Origin: Ascidiella aspersa
Taxonomy: Eukaryota
NCBI GenBank assembly: GCA_963924565.1
Contig: OZ004608.1
Span: 6,448,001-6,512,000, forward strand
Direction: 5' to 3'
DNA: 64,000 bases
Of the stretch, positions 13,946 through 19,593 are shown in pieces. Numbering within the stretch: position 1 is the first letter of the stretch; the number at the start of each line of letters is the position of its first letter. The translations under genes and the position numbers were made by a program. A model generated the notes under the pieces. It saw only the letters and a program-made list of their open reading frames with translations, had not been told where the DNA came from and searched no databases.

Positions 13946-16863
13946 AGTGAAATGGTGTCAAAAACTAAAACGACATAAATTTTTTTTGAAATTATTTAAC
14001 TTGATTATTAAACGAATTGAGCATAGCAATATGATTTAACAAAATATATAGCAAGCTTTATAAAATTGTCTTTAAGTTGATCAACTTTGTCTTTGTTTAA
14101 AAACAAATATAAATAATTGAAGATCCTTCAGTTGTTGCAATTGCTTTAGGCGCTATTGACACCCGAGTTATTAGGTTTGCAATTCACCACAAGTAAAACA
14201 ATAACGTTTATTGTTAGTTTTATTGTCTAATTTTTTTATTTTGAAATATTTTTTCGGGCGCGGTCAAAGATTTTTTTATAATAAGGCCTGGAGAACTGTT
14301 AAGATTGAAGATTGCCTGCCAAAACGTTGTATTGAGCGTTATCAATATTTATTCTGAGCTTCATAAAAGTGACGTTTAGTTTTATATTTCATAAAAATCA
14401 ATCTTATAAATAAATCCGATAAACATTTTGTTAATATATCATTAATAACCGCATTTTAGAATTATTAGGGAGGTAATTTGGTGATCCCTGGTATTGTTAA
14501 TCGTTTTTCTTTCGTCATTTTCTGTTATCGTTTGTTTATTTAACATCAATCTTCTTCCAACTTTCCTAATTTAAAACTTATTTAAAGGTAAATTATTCAT
14601 GCCGATATTTCAAGGTAAATTCTCTCGTTAAAGTTTGTTCGGTGTTTATTTATAATAACGTGTGTTTGAAACTCAAAAAAATGAAGTATATTACGTTTAA
14701 TAGACGTTCTTATTTACCAAGATTCATCTCTAATAGTTTTCATTCACCCTATTTTTCGATCGTATATTAAATTTTTAGGAATATATGATCGTTTTTGTAT
14801 ACCTTAATCTTACTGTTACGCCGCCCGCCGTGACCTGCGCACTGGGGCCTGGCCTCTGACCCCATACATTTGCCCGGCGGGTCGTAACCGCGTGAGTTCT
14901 TGTTGTTTGCAAAGGCTTCTGGTCAGATATGCTACCTGTCATAACCACAACTAAAATTCCAATCAAAAGTATATTGTTACAACGAATTAAAACGTTATCA
15001 AATAGCATTAGTGAACGTTATTTTCAAGTTAATGTGAGACAGACAGCCACCGCCTATTGCAGCGACTGTCGGCTAAAACTTCGCAAAAGACTTCTCTAGA
15101 AAAAAGCTCAAAGCCGCTAAGAAACGACATGTATATAGCCAATACGTAGAAAGAAAAAGAACACGAAAGTTACGTCATATTTGGCCAATAAGACTGGCCG
15201 GCACTCTGAAAACATGGCTAGGCATTACAGCGGCCATTCTAAGGCCAAATTGCAGCGGGAGTAAGAGGCCAGCAAAACAAGTGGCTTGTTTTGCAGAACG
15301 CGAGAACATCGCCCACAAGACTGACAGTTATAGATTACGAGTTAAAGGTTACATGTCAAGTTTGAAACGAGGCGAGAGAACGCAATACGGAAAACTTTAC
15401 ATCAAGAAATATTATATTATTCAACCAATAATACATTTGATTATGCGAAAGCTAGAATCTAAAGCCCTATTTAAAAATTCTTAAGATTACTTAATACTAC
15501 ATGAACTCTAAAATTTGACTTATTGCAATTAACTAATTTGGGTGTTTAAGTGTTGATAAACACGTAACACTTACCCTTGATATTAAAACACTTTCCTATT
15601 ATTAATTAAATGAATTTAGATTTATGGCTTTTTTGAGGCTTTGTATTTAAAGTTTATAGCTAAACCCATTTTACCGATGTTTAGAGTAGCTTGCTCTAAA
15701 CTAAAAATTGTTCTGATATTTAAAAAGCCGAGCGTTTCATCTTTAATTAAATGAAATTTTTGTCTCTTCGGGCAGTTGCAAGTTGTAAGAGTCCGAATAT
15801 AAATATCTAATAACTTTTAGTTCATTTATTCGATTCATTTTTGATTTGCTGATTTACAGTGAGCTAGCATTTTAAACAAACCGTTCATTTATGGGCCGGC
15901 TTTGAATTTTGCTTTTCAGCACAGTTAATTTTGTTTAAAGTTTGCTTTCTTTTTAGAAATTAATTGTTGAAAAGTAATTGCGATATGCATTTAATCTTAA
16001 ATATTGTTAGAATTTATTCGAAACGTTCATAAATATGAAATCCATTTCCGCATAGCTTTTGATTATAATTTTTAGGTGAACTTTCCTAAAACTTTTTACA
16101 CATTTTTAACAAGTCAATGTCAGTTTTTATCTATTGAATTTCATTGATGTGTTTGCTGTAGTCGTAGTGTGGTGTTAAATGCATTATATATAGAACTTTA
16201 ATAAAATATATACGCACTGTTTGTAAGATAAAAAAAAGTTATACTCGCAGGCTTTCAGAACTGAATACCAGATAAAAACGACCATTTAACATTATTAATG
16301 TTCTTGCTTTTGTAATTATAAAATCGGTTTGTATTTCTTTCAAGTAAAATAACGAACGTACACGCAAATCTGAGTGGTCTTGTTTTTAGACAAAACCAAG
16401 TAAAACTTGCCTTTACTTCCTAATATGTTCCGCGTAAAAGTATGCAAGGATTTGAACAGCCTTTAAAATGAAAGACACATACACATTTGTGATTATTGCA
16501 ACTGTGATCTTGCGAAGTACACTAAATATTGCCTCATCAACAATCTGTTTTCCAGTTTTTAGTTCCAACTACTTAAGAAATGTAAAATACTGTAAAATGA
16601 TTAATAAACTATACATAAACAATGTAAATATACGGTGCGAAAATATGCAAAAAGAGTCCAACTCGTCGTGGTTATGATATCACAGTTGAAAACAAAATAA
16701 TATTAAAGACACATATGGTTATGCAAAACATGTAAAAACTGTAACATTCACTGAACCCAATCGTCATTTATTTTAATAAGTAATCAATAAGTTTTACGCT
16801 GTTTAATTTTAAAATCGAGGGCACTTAATTATGCGTAAACGTTCTTGAATTGATAAAAGGATT

Positions 16864-19593
16864 TTATACCATTTCGTTGCTAATTTCTGCCTGGTCCTTC
16901 TTGAATTTATCATACAAAGGATTAGCTACCATTTCGTTGCTAATTTCTGCCTGGCCATTCTTGAATTGATCATACAAAGGATTGGCTACCATTTCTTTGC
17001 TAGTTTTCGCAGGATCATTTTTGAATTTCTCGTATAAAGGATTTGTGACAATCTCTTTTTCGCCATTTGTTTCGACAGGCACTATGAAGCAAAAAATATT
17101 GTCATAAGTTGTTTATTAGTAAAGGTATGGCTAAGTTGTTTAATAGCAAACTACTAGTTAAGGGTGGTCCTCGAACGGATTCATATAACATTACGAAAAA
17201 AAGTTGATTAGCTCAGTTTAAACTTTTTTATAGCTACCATTAAAGCTCATCTGAAACGTAGTTCTTGTTTGGGCGCAATAACCGTTGTACTTTAAAATTA
17301 TTAAAAACTTGTTTCTGAATTCCGTAAATGACCAGTACAGAGTTTGTCTAACCTTTTGGTATTCCTGAATAAACCACTTGGCCTTCCAGGTTTATTCTTA
17401 AACCGGTTTTTGTTGGGTCTTCGTTTGTATTATCTGGAAGAAACAAACCAATTGTTTTGTAATACATTAACGTCTTGCAACGTACCTAATTCGCATACAT
17501 TAACCAAGCAACGTACCTAATTCGCTTTTTGCTGATGATGTAGACCGTTTTCGTGATTTTCTGCAAAGGCAAGACAAAATGTAAAAACAAAATCTTCCAA
17601 ATTTGATGCTAATCAATTTATATCTATACTGACTGTATAAAACCCTAACAGATGATATTTATTTCCTTGTCAGCAATATTTCTCCGCAAGTTTGTAAATC
17701 CTTGCAACCAAAAATAAATATGTTGGCTTATATAGAGCTTGAATAACTTATTTTTTCATTCGACTTTGTTTATATTACGTCACTTGGATTAGTTGAGTTT
17801 TATTAAAAATAAATTATTCAATTATTCACTATTTACTAATAAGTTCAAAGTGTAGTTAACTCGAAGAGTAAAATAAAACTACTGACACCAAGCTATTGAA
17901 AGAAAAAAAATTAGTTGCATTGACATTCATTCCTACAAATTCAGCCCCGGTTAACCAAATTCAGTTGCTGTCTGCCAGATCGTGATTCGCAAAACACGAT
18001 TCGTAGATGTGTAACAATATGCGAGACACTGTTGGGTCGTATGGTTTTAGACATAGCTTCTTGATTTGGCAAAACTGTATATAGACTAAGTCTATTAGCA
18101 TCGCTTCTGCCAATGAGCACTGCTAATTTGTACATTATGGTGTACTTTACCAACCTTATGCAGAGCACGGCAATCACAATCATTGCACAGCAAAGCAGCA
18201 CAACCCCGCAAATCGATGCTGCCAGTATGGTAGTTTGGTGCTGCGCTGCCTTTCCGGCTTCCAGTGTGGTGTCAACTGTAACACAGCAAGCAAAATTTAT
18301 TATGTAGAGAGTTAATTCTGGCTACCAATGAAACTCTGCTTGCAAAATAGTCTAATTGTCCAATACCGTAGGATAATAAGGAGATATTGACTAATACCTA
18401 AGGATTAAATGCAAAGGTACCTGTGGAATAAGTTTGAGTGACGGTGCCAATGTTTGTTGTTATATTTGTTCCAAAATCGCTTTTGTTTTGATCTTTGAAC
18501 AAAAGTAATAAATAAGAGTTTTACGTGTAACACATTTTTAATCTTTGTTGCCCCATCAACACGAAAAACACAAAAAAGGAGGACATAACTTATAAACGTT
18601 AACCGAAATTTAAATTAGTCAGTGAATTACTTCTCTCTATAAATATTTCTGTTTGGATAATTGCAACGTTCAGGTCAAACGCTTAAAAATTGTGTTATTC
18701 AAACACTAGTAATTATTTTTGAGCAAGAGTTACATTCGCTCATATCGTAAGATTTTTGTTTTTAGTCAAAGCCAACAATTAACCTCACCACTTTGAAATT
18801 GCATAAAGTATCTGAATACGGATACGGCGATTAAGCTGAACAGCAAACCTACCGGTTGGAACGGTACTGGCTGTTTGAAAATCGGAAGTAGTTTGTTCAA
18901 TCTTACCTTTGGAGACATCAAATCCATCGTATGACGTTGAAGTTAACAAGTTTAATGATCTTTGTGTTGTTGATGACACAGCTGTGGTGGTAGTAGCTTC
19001 ATCTATGTGTTAAGTCAAATAAATAGTCAAATAAAAAAACACGTTATGCCTAATTTTAGTTAATTAAAGTCGTGTTAGATTTTCTTACCAATTTTTCGTT
19101 GGCAAATGAACCCTTCGTTTCTATTGCACTTTATATCAACCCAAAGATAGTCTGGGCCGTTTTCCATAGCTCCGCAATACTCGTTGAACAAAATAAAGTT
19201 GATTTCCTCGCCAGGGGTCCACTTGGTATCATTTAGAAGTGTCCCATCCCACCATTTAAATTTTCCATCAGTATTCTGTAATCCGATATAGTAAGTCTGT
19301 GTGTTTCCTAAACAACATAGAATTATTAAACAACGACATTTCGTGTAAATATAGCTGTTGTGCGTTTTTATACCTTTGGTGCTGTTAAGTTGCTTTGCTA
19401 AGAAAACTTGAATCTCGTTCGTGTTAACTTTTGCCAAAGTTCCATTCATTTTTTCACAAGCAATCGAGGCTTCCTTAAAGTTAAGTTGCCTGCTTCTTTC
19501 GATATAGTATTCAAATTCACCATGCCGCTGCCAAAGAGCTAAAGAACTTTCGGCCAACGCAAACACAGTAAGGGCATAAACAAACATCTGCAT
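16864..19593 (-). CDS. Type I transmembrane C-type lectin-like receptor B2 (ITIM VVYSGI plus 3x NPLY tail)
   Basis: Exons 19593-19374, 19307-19089, 19002-18853, 18275-18155 (TM), 17560-17517 (RKSRKRSTSSAKSEL), 17433-17353 (..EGQVVYSGIPK), 17081-16864 (60-nt repeats encoding NPLY). All phases are compatible. Confidence 0.83.
16867..17052 (-). repeat. Coding 60-bp tandem repeat (3 x EMVANPLYDxFK..)
   Basis: Visible in both DNA and ORF 16864-17082. Confidence 0.9.

What the first reader, a model, noticed from the sequence alone, without database searches (positions are those of the whole stretch)
16864..17560. B2 tail: canonical ITIM plus three tandem NPLY motifs on a close paralog of the B1/B3 ectodomain
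Seen: the tail exons, unrelated to those of B1/B3, encode RKSRKR, then VVYSGI (17360-17377; fits [SIVL]xYxx[ILV]), then a 20-aa unit x3 with V[T/A]NPLY. Established: ITIMs recruit SHP-1/2 or SHIP; NPxY binds PTB/FERM proteins (Dok, Shc, Dab, talin) and drives endocytosis. Inference: B2 is the inhibitory or endocytic counterpart of B1, and NPLY dosage is set by a coding minisatellite.
Basis: partly seen in the sequence, partly recalled or inferred. Interest (0 to 1): 0.75.

Follow-up and report, generated by a model that had tools for sequence, protein, structure and literature searches.

The report
Sea-squirt lectin receptor, repeated NPLY tail
A sea-squirt cell-surface lectin receptor gene ends in a short docking motif repeated three times, and the number of repeats differs between sister genes, which probably tunes how the receptor couples to adaptor proteins inside the cell, though no function has been tested.

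Summary
On the minus strand lies a 356-codon type I receptor gene (B2): signal peptide, C-type lectin domain, Ser/Thr stalk, membrane span, then three small exons giving RKSRKR, VVYSGI (17377-17360) and a 60-nt unit x3 with V[T/A]NPLY. Contigs of run X3, which are spliced like RNA, confirm the splices from the lectin exons to the membrane exon. They also cover the repeat exon and its 3'UTR. The three tail splices, including the VVYSGI exon, were not seen.

Four more genes on the same chromosome have the same tail with 4, 4, 5 and 3+1 decayed NPLY. More diverged lectin receptors, including rhamnose-type (SUEL) lectin receptors on another chromosome, have tails with 1-6 units sharing the core E-x-V-x-N-x-L-Y. 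This core matches the talin-binding repeats of layilin and the NPLY of integrin beta3.

My reading is a multivalent docking tail for PTB-fold adaptors, with valency set by unit gain and loss. The ITIM match is weak evidence: 14% of shuffles give one.

The scan had noted the surrounding lectin-receptor array before, on other DNA, but not this tail class. No relatives were found in public protein sets.

The parts
19374..19593 (-). [quoted passage not shown]
   Evidence: Open frame and Pfam Lectin_C at 1.2e-13 on the read-through frame. The splice to exon 2 is seen in X3 contig record 12 and in one X9 RNA read.
19089..19307 (-). Exon 2: C-terminal half of the lectin domain. It reads PGEEIN..WVD where a diverged paralog (L015) has EPN..WND.
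   Evidence: Joints 19373|19306(+1) and 19089|19002 are in X3 contigs.
18907..19002 (-). Exon 3: Ser/Thr-rich stalk
   Evidence: Joints 19089|19002 and 18907|18492 are in X3 record 11.
18421..18492 (-).
   Evidence: X3 record 11 joins 18907|18492 and 18421|18275. The translation is given.
18155..18275 (-). Membrane-span exon (..ILAASICGVVLLCCAMIVIAVLCI), ending in phase 2
   Evidence: X3 record 11 ends 2 letters past 18155.
17985..17991 (.). Breakpoint where similarity to B1 and B3 ends (about 17988) and the tail cassette begins
   Evidence: blastn. An X1 DNA contig also branches at 17988 (table 7).
17517..17560 (-). Tail exon T1 (44 nt): (R)KSRKRSTSSAKSEL, the basic stop-transfer segment. It shifts the phase from 2 to 1.
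   Evidence: Present in all 5 paralogs at 93-100% identity. Not seen in RNA.
17353..17433 (-). Tail exon T2 (81 nt, phase 1-1 cassette): ..GQVVYSGIPK. The ITIM-consensus / YxxPhi site is at 17377-17360.
   Evidence: VVYSGI is identical in 5 of 5 paralogs. Not seen in RNA. Chance of an ITIM-consensus match is 14%.
16864..17081 (-). Tail exon T3: lead peptide plus three 60-nt units, then stop TAA at 16866-16864. NPLY at 17043-17032, 16983-16972 and 16923-16912.
   Evidence: X3 contigs cover 16867-16938 and the bin 16908-17034, with no depth over the flanking intron.
16804..16863 (-). Decayed last unit after the stop (..NPFINSRT..), shared by all five paralogs
16400..16863 (-). 3' untranslated region (extends below 16400)
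   Evidence: X3 record 9 (572 nt, 0 differences) runs from 16894 to beyond 16400. One X9 RNA read pair lies at 16527-16653.

Best explanation
B2 is an expressed type I membrane receptor with one C-type lectin domain. It is one of five recent copies that share a grafted cytoplasmic tail.

The working part of that tail is a short linear motif, hydrophobic-V-x-N-P-L-Y. This is the kind of peptide bound by PTB-fold domains: the talin or kindlin FERM F3 subdomain, or adaptors of the Dok, Shc, Numb, Dab and GULP type. In B2 it is repeated three times. Each repeat also forms Y-x-x-F, a clathrin-adaptor type sorting signal.

On ligand binding or clustering, the tail would recruit several copies of such an adaptor. 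This would couple the receptor to internalisation or engulfment, or to the actin cytoskeleton. Unphosphorylated tyrosine would favour talin- or GULP-like partners, and phosphorylated tyrosine would favour Dok- or Shc-like partners. The number of units, changed by unequal exchange within the 60-nt array, sets the valency. VVYSGI, encoded by a separate in-frame cassette exon, adds one more tyrosine site that could be a sorting signal or an ITIM.

Shown here: the gene anatomy, part of the splicing, transcription of the repeat exon, the copy-number differences and the conservation of the motif core. Inferred: every binding step and the cellular outcome.
For: - Anatomy, frames and splice sites.
- Lectin_C at 1.2e-13.
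- X3 contigs join exon 1 to exon 2 (record 12) and exon 2 through exons 3 and 3b to the membrane exon (record 11), using GT..AG introns. They cover T3 and the 3'UTR with no intron depth.
- The same tail sits on five genes with 3, 4, 4, 5 and 3+1 NPLY. All five end in the same decayed unit, so the differences are internal gains or losses.
- Diverged tails keep the core although the period and linker differ. These include 16-aa units EKETVANPLYG (1-5 NPLY) on chromosome piece C2, and EVDN[VI]LYG units (4-5 full units) behind SUEL lectin exons on C7.
- Among units picked by N-x-[LIV]-[YN], V at -5 is found in 20/20, 23/24 and 11/14, and E at -7 in 20/20, 22/24 and 7/14.
- F at +3 is found in 19/20 B2-like units only.
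- Layilin, a type I single-lectin-domain protein, binds talin through repeated ESG[FW]V-x-N[DE]IY modules, that is V(-5)-x-N-x-I-Y: passages of PMC2132847.
- NPLY747 of integrin beta3 binds talin F3 and, when phosphorylated, Dok1: passages of PMC4479986.
- Draper carries NPxY, and its splice isoform Draper-II carries an ITIM that binds the SHP-2 orthologue: passages of PMC8092387.
- The genome encodes PID-type (9 matches) and IRS-type (7 matches) PTB domains.
- Tail nonsynonymous distance is 0.012 against 0.03-0.04 in tail introns for several pairs, though on very few changes.
Against: - No contig or read was laid on T1 or T2. The joints from the membrane exon to T1, T1 to T2 and T2 to T3 were not seen. 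The tool warns that a hole proves nothing. The NPLY frame in the mRNA therefore rests on splice-site and phase logic.
- The five copies are too alike for a selection test. Variant codons are T1 1 synonymous / 3 nonsynonymous, T2 3/2, and start of T3 0/2.
- One copy is dead: a 1-nt deletion in the membrane exon, a GA donor and NPLN. Another has an AT donor at exon 3. The subfamily is therefore in flux.
- Pro at -2 is kept in only 2 of 14 C7 units, so the family-wide motif is NxLY rather than NPxY.
- V rather than F or Y at -5 does not fit the recalled FxNPxY requirement of LDL-receptor-type endocytic adaptors.
- No relative was found outside this genome, so there is no cross-species conservation to lean on.
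- There is no binding, phosphorylation or localisation data of any kind.
Confidence: 0.55

Rival explanations
1. B2 is an inhibitory receptor. Phosphorylated VVYSGI recruits an SHP-1/2- or SHIP-type phosphatase and damps signals from B1/B3-type receptors that share the ectodomain and carry a YxxL tail.
For: - VVYSGI fits the ITIM consensus and is identical in 5 of 5 copies.
- An open stretch in the B1 tail region ends in ..DEAGYITLNA, an activating-type motif.
- B2 and B1/B3 share 76-78% of residues in lectin exon 2 and 90.5-94.9% of bases up to the breakpoint.
- Draper-II sets a precedent for an ITIM added by splicing to an NPxY receptor (PMC8092387 passages).
Against: - The consensus is loose: 14% of shuffled tails contain one.
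- The motif is equally a YxxPhi sorting signal.
- The copies are 94-99% identical in that exon, so identity says little.
- In the 13 more diverged tails the only consensus matches (LNYIYI, 2 of 13) lie upstream of the tail proper. 9 of 10 C2 tails end instead in [DE]LY[SA][QK]VKK, with D or E at -2. The recurrent element is therefore Y-S-x-[IV], not the ITIM.
- The exon was not seen in RNA.
- The ectodomains are less alike than in classical paired receptors.
Confidence: 0.22
2. A constitutive endocytic or scavenger receptor. The NPLY[DE]xF units act only as clathrin sorting signals (NPxY plus YxxPhi) for uptake and recycling of bound glycans, without signalling. This would resemble the mannose-receptor family and the LDL-receptor family.
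For: - Each B2-like unit overlaps NPxY with Y-x-x-F (19 of 20 units).
- The lectin domain's best solved relatives are endocytic receptors: PLA2R at 1e-11, and mannose receptor 1 and 2 at 1e-6 to 1e-5.
Against: - Y-x-x-Phi is absent from the units of the diverged tails. No +3 residue of 24 C2 units is L, I, M, F or V, and only 1 of 14 C7 units has one. It is therefore not the conserved function of the module.
- V at -5 is not the aromatic residue recalled as needed by Dab2- or ARH-type adaptors.
- The B-type lectin domain lacks the EPN/QPD and WND sugar-site residues.
Confidence: 0.15
3. The repeat is a neutral by-product. A slippery 60-nt array sits at the end of a young, partly decaying gene family. 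Copy number drifts without functional consequence, and the motif matches are incidental.
For: - One of five copies is a pseudogene and one has a damaged splice donor.
- Tail divergence is about the same as intron divergence at the base level.
- No relatives were found outside the genome.
Against: - The frame stays open through every unit in all five copies.
- The core E-x-V-x-N-x-L-Y is retained in tails whose linkers, period (16, 17 or 20 aa) and ectodomain type differ. Drift does not predict this.
- B2 itself is transcribed and spliced.
Confidence: 0.08

Closest known systems
Layilin (vertebrate type I C-type-lectin-domain protein, talin-binding)
   Same: - Signal peptide, one C-type lectin domain, one membrane span.
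- A cytoplasmic tail with a short motif repeated 2-3 times: ESG[FW]V-x-N[DE]IY, that is hydrophobic(-6)-V(-5)-x-N(-3)-x-I(-1)-Y(0).
- Against this, B2 has [IM]-V-[TA]-N-P-L-Y.
- One layilin copy sits at the very C-terminus, as in two of the three C7 tails read (PMC2132847 passages).
   Different: - No test of common descent was possible, as no layilin sequence was at hand and the lectin domain's best solved matches are PLA2R and the mannose receptor.
- B2 has Pro at -2, a 20-aa tandem unit encoded by a 60-nt array, variable unit number, and an extra VVYSGI exon.
- Talin binding is untested.
Integrin beta3 membrane-proximal NPLY747 (talin F3 / Dok1 phosphorylation switch)
   Same: The identical tetrapeptide NPLY in a short cytoplasmic tail. 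It is bound by PTB-fold domains, with tyrosine phosphorylation switching the partner (PMC4479986 passages; abstract of PMC2364684 in the listing).
   Different: - Integrin tails have one NPxY and one NxxY, not a tandem array.
- The Pfam integrin-beta tail model matches T3 only at E 0.13, below its cut-off.
- The ectodomain is unrelated.
Draper / CED-1 / MEGF10 engulfment receptors, and the Draper-II isoform
   Same: - Single-pass receptors whose tails combine NPxY (read by CED-6/GULP) with other tyrosine motifs.
- Draper-II gains an ITIM by alternative splicing and binds the SHP-2 orthologue (PMC8092387 passages).
- B2's ITIM-consensus lies on an in-frame cassette exon. The diverged relative L015 pairs NPLY units with an exon carrying two YxxL.
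   Different: - Their ectodomains are EMI/EGF, not lectin.
- They have one NPxY, not a variable array.
- The two YxxL in L015 are 25 residues apart, outside the canonical ITAM spacing.
- There is no evidence that B2's exon T2 is alternatively used.
LDL-receptor family and mannose-receptor family endocytic signals
   Same: NPxY-type or NxxY-type tyrosine signals in type I receptors, in part with C-type lectin domains. B2-like units also give YxxPhi.
   Different: - These motifs are recalled, not checked in any call.
- The aromatic residue at -5 is missing here (V).
- Those receptors have one or two motifs, not a tandem array.
Paired activating/inhibitory lectin-like receptors of the vertebrate NK complex
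   Same: A tandem array of lectin-domain receptor genes in which similar ectodomains carry different tyrosine-motif tails.
   Different: - The vertebrate genes are type II, whereas these are type I.
- Identity between 'partners' here is only 76-78% in the lectin exon.
- Opposing signals are not shown.

Membership tests
ITIM-bearing inhibitory receptor | Cytoplasmic [SIVL]xYxx[ILV] | tested here: met
   VVYSGI at 17377-17360, about 37 residues after the membrane span. The consensus also appears in 14% of shuffled tails.
ITIM-bearing inhibitory receptor | Motif-bearing exon present in the mature mRNA | tested here: inconclusive
   No depth on 17289-17669 in the RNA-like run X3, and only 4 reads laid in total from RNA run X9. 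The tool says a hole proves nothing.
ITIM-bearing inhibitory receptor | Motif conserved in diverged relatives | tested here: not met
   Identical in the 5 young copies. In the 13 more diverged tails the only consensus matches (LNYIYI, 2 of 13) lie upstream of the tail proper.
ITIM-bearing inhibitory receptor | Phosphotyrosine-dependent recruitment of SHP-1/2 or SHIP, and inhibition | not testable with these tools
   Needs biochemistry.
NPxY / PTB-domain ligand | N-P-x-Y in a cytoplasmic segment with a hydrophobic residue at -5 | tested here: met
   Three V[TA]NPLY in B2. V at -5 in 20 of 20 B2-like units.
NPxY / PTB-domain ligand | Core kept where surrounding sequence has diverged | tested here: met
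   V(-5) is found in 23/24 C2 units and 11/14 C7 units, and L(-1) in 24/24 and 11/14. P(-2) is found in 21/24 but only 2/14, so NxLY is the wider core. N, [LIV] and Y were fixed by the way the units were picked.
NPxY / PTB-domain ligand | Binding to a PTB or FERM-F3 domain | not testable with these tools
   Candidate partners exist: PF00640 gives 9 matches and PF02174 gives 7 matches in the genome.
Layilin group of C-type-lectin-domain proteins | Type I topology with a single lectin domain | tested here: met
Layilin group of C-type-lectin-domain proteins | Repeated talin-binding module ESG[FW]V-x-N[DE]IY in the tail | tested here: inconclusive
   The same spacing V(-5)-x-N-x-[IL]-Y and a hydrophobic -6 are present. 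The ESG part is absent and -2 is P, not D or E.
Layilin group of C-type-lectin-domain proteins | Lectin domain groups with layilin/chondrolectin in a tree | not tested
   No layilin sequence was available from a tool. The PDB search gives PLA2R, the mannose receptors and CD23 as best matches. Word searches were blank.
Coding minisatellite | In-frame head-to-tail units | tested here: met
   Period 60, 3.1 copies, score 250. The frame is open in all five copies.
Coding minisatellite | Unit number varies between copies | tested here: met
   3, 4, 4, 4 and 5 full units in the five paralogs, with a shared decayed end unit. The diverged subfamily has 1-5 NPLY.
Coding minisatellite | Unit number varies between individuals at one locus | tested here: inconclusive
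   Contigs of the DNA-like run X1 break inside the array, and no 60-nt gain or loss was listed.

The most novel reading that the evidence does not exclude
The E-x-V-x-N-x-L-Y unit is a lineage-specific, copy-number-variable docking cassette that sea squirts have spread over at least two unrelated lectin-receptor classes (C-type and SUEL type). It acts as a signalling rheostat: unequal exchange adds or removes units and so sets how strongly each receptor engages one PTB-fold adaptor. In the B2 group it is combined with an ITIM cassette exon. This would make regulated engulfment or inhibitory receptors that are paired with YxxL-tailed sisters. The megabase array would then be a type I, non-vertebrate counterpart of the NK-complex paired-receptor system.
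Probability: 0.2. Interest if true: 0.75.

Novelty: new variant of a known kind. Interest (0 to 1): 0.5.

Why it matters
Tunicates are the closest living relatives of vertebrates and lack antibodies and T-cell receptors. How their large germline receptor arrays signal is largely unknown.

If this tail is a docking module whose valency evolves by repeat gain and loss, it gives a concrete, testable handle on signal strength in such arrays: one short peptide, and a natural series of receptors with 1 to 6 copies.

It would also link a vertebrate cytoskeletal adaptor site (layilin, integrin beta3 NPLY) to an expanded family of invertebrate-chordate lectin receptors.

If the motif proves inert, the locus remains a clear example of tail swapping and in-frame minisatellite dynamics in a young gene family.

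Tried and rejected
**RNA proof of the tail splices.** The single read-laying run confirmed the upstream splices and the transcription of T3 and the 3'UTR. It gave nothing on T1 or T2, and the cap prevents a second, deeper look.

**Relatives outside the genome.**
- Word search with T3: no candidate.
- Word search with a C7 stalk-span-tail frame, tail region only: 2027 candidates, none at E <= 0.01.
- Word search with the lectin read-through frame: 9 candidates, none at E <= 1e-6.
- These word searches see only proteins of 0.55-1.75 times the query length, so the blanks say nothing of longer proteins.
- Full HMMER scan of 1.84 billion representatives with T3: 4 hits at E 6.8e-6 to 3.7e-4 and none below 1e-10. 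I read all four. By eye they are unrelated repeat proteins (Cys-rich NPLYD repeats, Ser-rich repeats, FPLxW repeats, ankyrin-like repeats). This was not tested further.

**Solved structures.** T3 gives only a proteasome subunit at E 1.1.

**Pfam on T3.** Only sub-threshold hits, among them the integrin-beta tail model at E 0.13.

**Selection test on the tail.** There are too few changes.

**B2's third unit followed by a recent nonsense mutation.** I first thought this, but rejected it: all five copies share the same decayed terminal unit and stop.

**Literature.** Searches for ascidian + C-type lectin + ITIM + NPxY, layilin + Ciona and C-type lectin + tandem + NPXY + cytoplasmic tail + repeats found no description of such a tail. 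One search was too loose to be informative. Supplementary files were not opened, and I know of none that bears on this.

- In some searches I set exon 2 to start at 19306 instead of 19307, so its translation is out of frame. This was corrected.
- One of the 14 C7 'units' (VLYSSWGNGINSNTAN) is an artefact of the pattern.
- Two C-terminal C7 units of 13 residues were dropped from that table.

**Spliced model.** I never joined the exons into one protein for any search or fold. Each exon or open frame was searched by itself, so no search with the full-length B2 protein was made.
Full report
**What is there.**

The window is AT-rich animal DNA (31-37% G+C). Earlier notes of this scan call the genome a sea squirt's; I did not verify the species.

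- Exon 1 (19593-19374) and exon 2 (19307-19089) encode a signal peptide and one C-type lectin domain. Pfam Lectin_C scores 1.2e-13 on the read-through frame.
- The nearest solved relatives of the lectin domain are PLA2R (1e-11), then the mannose receptors and CD23 at about 1e-6 to 1e-5.
- Two Ser/Thr-rich stalk exons follow: 19002-18907, and 18492-18421.
- The membrane exon is 18275-18155 and ends in phase 2.
- T1 (17560-17517) supplies the basic stop-transfer RKSRKR and moves the phase from 2 to 1.
- T2 (17433-17353, an in-frame 81-nt cassette) ends ..GQVVYSGIPK.
- T3 (17081-16864) has a 14-residue lead and three 20-residue units, E[IM]V[TA]NPLY[DE]xFK.., before TAA.
- Tandem Repeats Finder gives period 60, 3.1 copies, score 250 at 16856-17043.
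- The model adds up to 356 codons with a tail of about 114 residues.

**Transcript evidence (the only reads call allowed).**

Run X3 has no recorded type, but its contigs behave as RNA.
- Record 12 joins exon 1 to exon 2 at 19373|19306 (cut +1).
- Record 11 joins 19089|19002, 18907|18492 and 18421|18275, all with GT..AG introns on the minus strand. It stops two letters after the membrane exon.
- X3 has no depth over the introns.
- Record 11 is identical to B2 in exons 2, 3 and 3b, including a B2-specific base in 3b. It has four differences in the membrane exon, and the DNA-like run X1 of the same study shows the same four.
- X3 record 9 (572 nt, no differences) runs from inside the last NPLY unit (16894) through the 3'UTR to beyond 16400. 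X3 also covers 16867-16938 and the bin 16908-17034.
- The raw RNA run X9 was read to only about 6% and gave four reads: one across the exon 1/2 joint and one pair in the 3'UTR.

So B2 is transcribed and correctly spliced up to the membrane exon, and T3 with its 3'UTR is in RNA. No contig was laid on T1 or T2, nor on the first 47 nt of T3. The tool states that a filter leaves records out and that a hole proves nothing.

Frame logic favours T1. A direct splice from the membrane exon to T3 would read T3 out of the NPLY frame, by my reading. T2 is a phase 1-1 exon, so it could be skipped without breaking the frame.

**The tail is a grafted cassette.**

blastn similarity of B2 to B1 and to B3 is 90.5% over 20000-18587 and 94.7-94.9% over 18586-17988. 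It stops at B2 17988 = B1 11042 = B3 60689, and nothing downstream matches at E 1e-5. An open stretch in the B1 tail region ends ..VVQDEAGYITLNA, as in note s1-801636.

**The same tail on five genes, with different unit numbers.**

T3 DNA matches five places on the same chromosome piece, C2: 6.465 Mb (the window), 6.515, 6.605, 6.620 and 6.642 Mb (9 matches from 5 candidates). The T1-intron-T2 stretch matches the same five at 94-100%. All five have the B-type ectodomain exons.

| Copy | NPLY motifs |
|---|---|
| B2 (window) | 3 |
| g6641 | 4 |
| g6604 | 4 |
| g6619 | 5 |
| g6514 | 3, plus one NPLN |

All five end with the same decayed unit..EMV-stop-NPFINSRT. The differences are therefore gains or losses of internal units, not truncations. 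B2 and g6641 differ by 0.7-0.9% in their introns, yet have 3 and 4 units.

Not all copies are healthy.
- g6514 has a 1-nt deletion in the membrane exon, a GA donor after T1, and the NPLN unit.
- g6619 has AT instead of GT at the exon 3 donor.
- g6604 lacks a usable exon 3b.

**A wider family of tails with the same core.**

A protein search of the genome with T3 also found weaker matches at C2 6.90-7.02 Mb (E 5.6e-5 to 0.03). Read out, these tails have a 16-residue unit..EKETVANPLYG.., with 2, 3, 4 and 5 NPLY in four genes, and 1-2 in further members. 9 of 10 end in [DE]LY[SA][QK]VKK. One of them (L015) has a canonical EPN..WND lectin exon and, between the membrane exon and the NPLY exon, an open stretch with YSSL and YSHL 25 residues apart.

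A search with one of these tails gave 31 matches at E <= 1, including sites on C7, C6 and C1. On C7 (27.41-27.54 Mb) there are seven loci. In the three that I read:
- A single open frame encodes a mucin-like stalk, a membrane span and a tail.
- The tail has 4-5 full units, such as ..QKQEVDNVLYGVSKVND.., and two of the three tails end ..EVANPLYHL and ..EVDNQLYEL.
- For the two whose upstream DNA I fetched, the exons 0.8-2.4 kb upstream match the SUEL (rhamnose/galactose) lectin domain at 1.7e-14 and 5.7e-14. That these exons belong to the same gene is inferred from distance and strand.

I picked units with the pattern N-x-[LIV]-[YN], which fixes those three positions, and tabulated only those with a full 16-residue window.

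| Position | B2-like | C2 subfamily | C7 |
|---|---|---|---|
| V at -5 | 20/20 | 23/24 | 11/14 |
| E at -7 | 20/20 | 22/24 | 7/14 |
| L at -1 | 20/20 | 24/24 | 11/14 |
| P at -2 | 20/20 | 21/24 | 2/14 |
| Hydrophobic at +3 | 20/20 (F in 19) | 0/24 | 1/14 |

(one C7 row is a pattern artefact and two short terminal units were dropped)

The conserved element is thus E-x-V-x-N-x-L-Y. Linker, period (20, 16 and about 17 residues) and even the ectodomain class differ. This is the best evidence here that the motif itself is under constraint and that multiplication happened repeatedly.

Within the five young copies a selection test has no power. Variant codons are T1 1 synonymous / 3 nonsynonymous, T2 3/2, and the start of T3 0/2. 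Tail dN is about 0.012, against 0.03-0.04 in tail introns for several pairs.

**How it most likely works.**

Inferred: the unit is a ligand for PTB-fold domains. Three comparisons with known systems support this.
- **Layilin.** This is a type I protein with one C-type lectin domain. It binds the talin head through repeated ESG[FW]V + N[DE]IY modules. The peptide and oligonucleotide printed in the paper give ..ESGWVENEIY and ..ESGFVTNDIY, that is hydrophobic(-6)-V(-5)-x-N(-3)-x-I(-1)-Y(0). One or three tandem copies suffice for binding (passages of PMC2132847).
- **Integrin beta3.** B2's exact tetrapeptide NPLY is the talin F3 site of integrin beta3. When it is phosphorylated it becomes a Dok1 site (passages of PMC4479986; abstract of PMC2364684 in the listing).
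- **Engulfment receptors.** Draper, CED-1 and MEGF10 use NPxY to bind CED-6/GULP. Draper-II adds an ITIM by splicing that binds the SHP-2 orthologue (passages of PMC8092387).

The genome encodes both PID-type and IRS-type PTB domains (9 and 7 matches over the cut-off).

From memory, not checked in any call:
- the Dok PTB preference (Y/M)xxNxL-pY, which M-V-A-N-P-L-Y would fit;
- the Shc preference for a hydrophobic residue at -5;
- the FxNPxY rule of LDL-receptor adaptors, which V at -5 fits poorly;
- YxxPhi as the AP-2 signal, which the B2-like units (NPLY-[DE]-x-F) also form.

I therefore favour a multivalent adaptor-docking tail that couples the receptor to uptake, engulfment or the cytoskeleton, with valency set by unit number.

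**The ITIM.**

VVYSGI fits the consensus and is identical in all five copies. Several points weaken it.
- 14% of shuffles of the tail's own residues contain such a match.
- It also reads as YxxPhi.
- The more diverged tails carry no ITIM-consensus in the tail proper. The only matches, LNYIYI in 2 of 13, lie upstream of the tail.
- Most C2 tails instead share Y-S-x-[IV]-x-K at the C-terminal end, with an acidic residue at -2.

The recurring partner of the NPLY units is therefore a Y-S-x-[IV] site. B2's fit to the ITIM consensus may be incidental. I put a working ITIM at roughly one in four to one in five.

**Relatives and novelty.**

No relative of the tail was found in public protein collections. 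Two tail word searches and one lectin-domain word search were blank, within their length limits. The full HMMER scan gave four weak hits that by eye are unrelated repeat proteins.

A run labelled as another organism (X4) holds near-identical pieces of T1 and T3, with 3-4 differences per 88-131 nt.

Paper searches found no description of such a tail.

The scan has already described the surrounding megabase array of type I lectin receptors with swapped tyrosine tails on other windows (s1-794394, s1-790843, s1-801635). My exon 2 search agrees: 143 matches, nearly all on C2 between 5.6 and 8.1 Mb. A word look-up for NPLY/NPxY notes was blank.

I class the finding as a new variant of a known kind: a layilin-like, integrin-like NxxY docking tail, here as a variable tandem array shared by two lectin-receptor classes.

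**Limits.**
- Repeat-number variation between individuals could not be read.
- No expression level, cell type, binding or function is known.

Noticed in passing
window 19593-19089 versus L009-L012: The lectin-domain exons of the five B2-like genes are more diverged than the introns around them. For example, exon 2 is 87.2% identical between B2 and g6619, against 98.5-98.8% for the flanking introns. dN/dS is about 1.1-1.6 for six of the ten pairs, and dS is also above intron divergence. This fits diversifying selection, patchy gene conversion from other paralogs, or both.
   Followed up: partly
G000 C7:27.41-27.54 Mb (L018, L019, L025, L028, L029): A cluster of seven loci. In the three that were read, one exon encodes a mucin-like stalk, a membrane span and a tail of EVDN[VI]LYG-type units. 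For the two whose upstream DNA was fetched, SUEL-type lectin exons lie 0.8-2.4 kb upstream (PF02140, 1.7e-14 and 5.7e-14). A second lectin class therefore uses the same tail module.
   Followed up: partly
L009 (G000 C2:6514000-6520000): The NPLY-tailed copy just beyond the window's end looks dead. It has a 1-nt deletion in the membrane exon, GA instead of GT after T1, and one unit changed to NPLN.
   Followed up: yes
L011 and L010: g6619 has AT instead of GT at the donor of stalk exon 3, which is an in-frame exon and so could be skipped. g6604 has no usable counterpart of stalk exon 3b and a 3-nt deletion in the membrane exon.
   Followed up: partly
L015:2902-3162: In a diverged NPLY-tailed gene, an open stretch between the membrane exon and the NPLY exon carries EYSSL and DYSHL 25 residues apart. 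This is ITAM-like but wider than the canonical spacing.
   Followed up: no
window 18163-18214: Runs X1 (DNA-like) and X3 (RNA-like) of one study carry four base differences in B2's membrane exon. These are the states seen in paralogs g6619 and g6514, while the neighbouring exons match B2 exactly. This is either an allele or a short gene-conversion tract.
   Followed up: partly
window 18832 (run X4): A low-depth contig of run X4, labelled as another organism, continues from 18832 into letters that read as the ..EAGYITLN.. tail exon in the opposite orientation to B2. This is a different local arrangement or a chimeric contig (table 7).
   Followed up: no
window 17525-17477: The T1 donor region GCGAATTAGGTACGTTGC occurs twice, 31 nt apart. 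Use of the second copy as a donor would run into a stop codon.
   Followed up: no
window 19230-19110: The B-type lectin domain reads ..PGEEIN.. and ..WVD.. where the diverged paralog L015 has EPN and WND. It may therefore not bind sugar through the usual calcium site.
   Followed up: no
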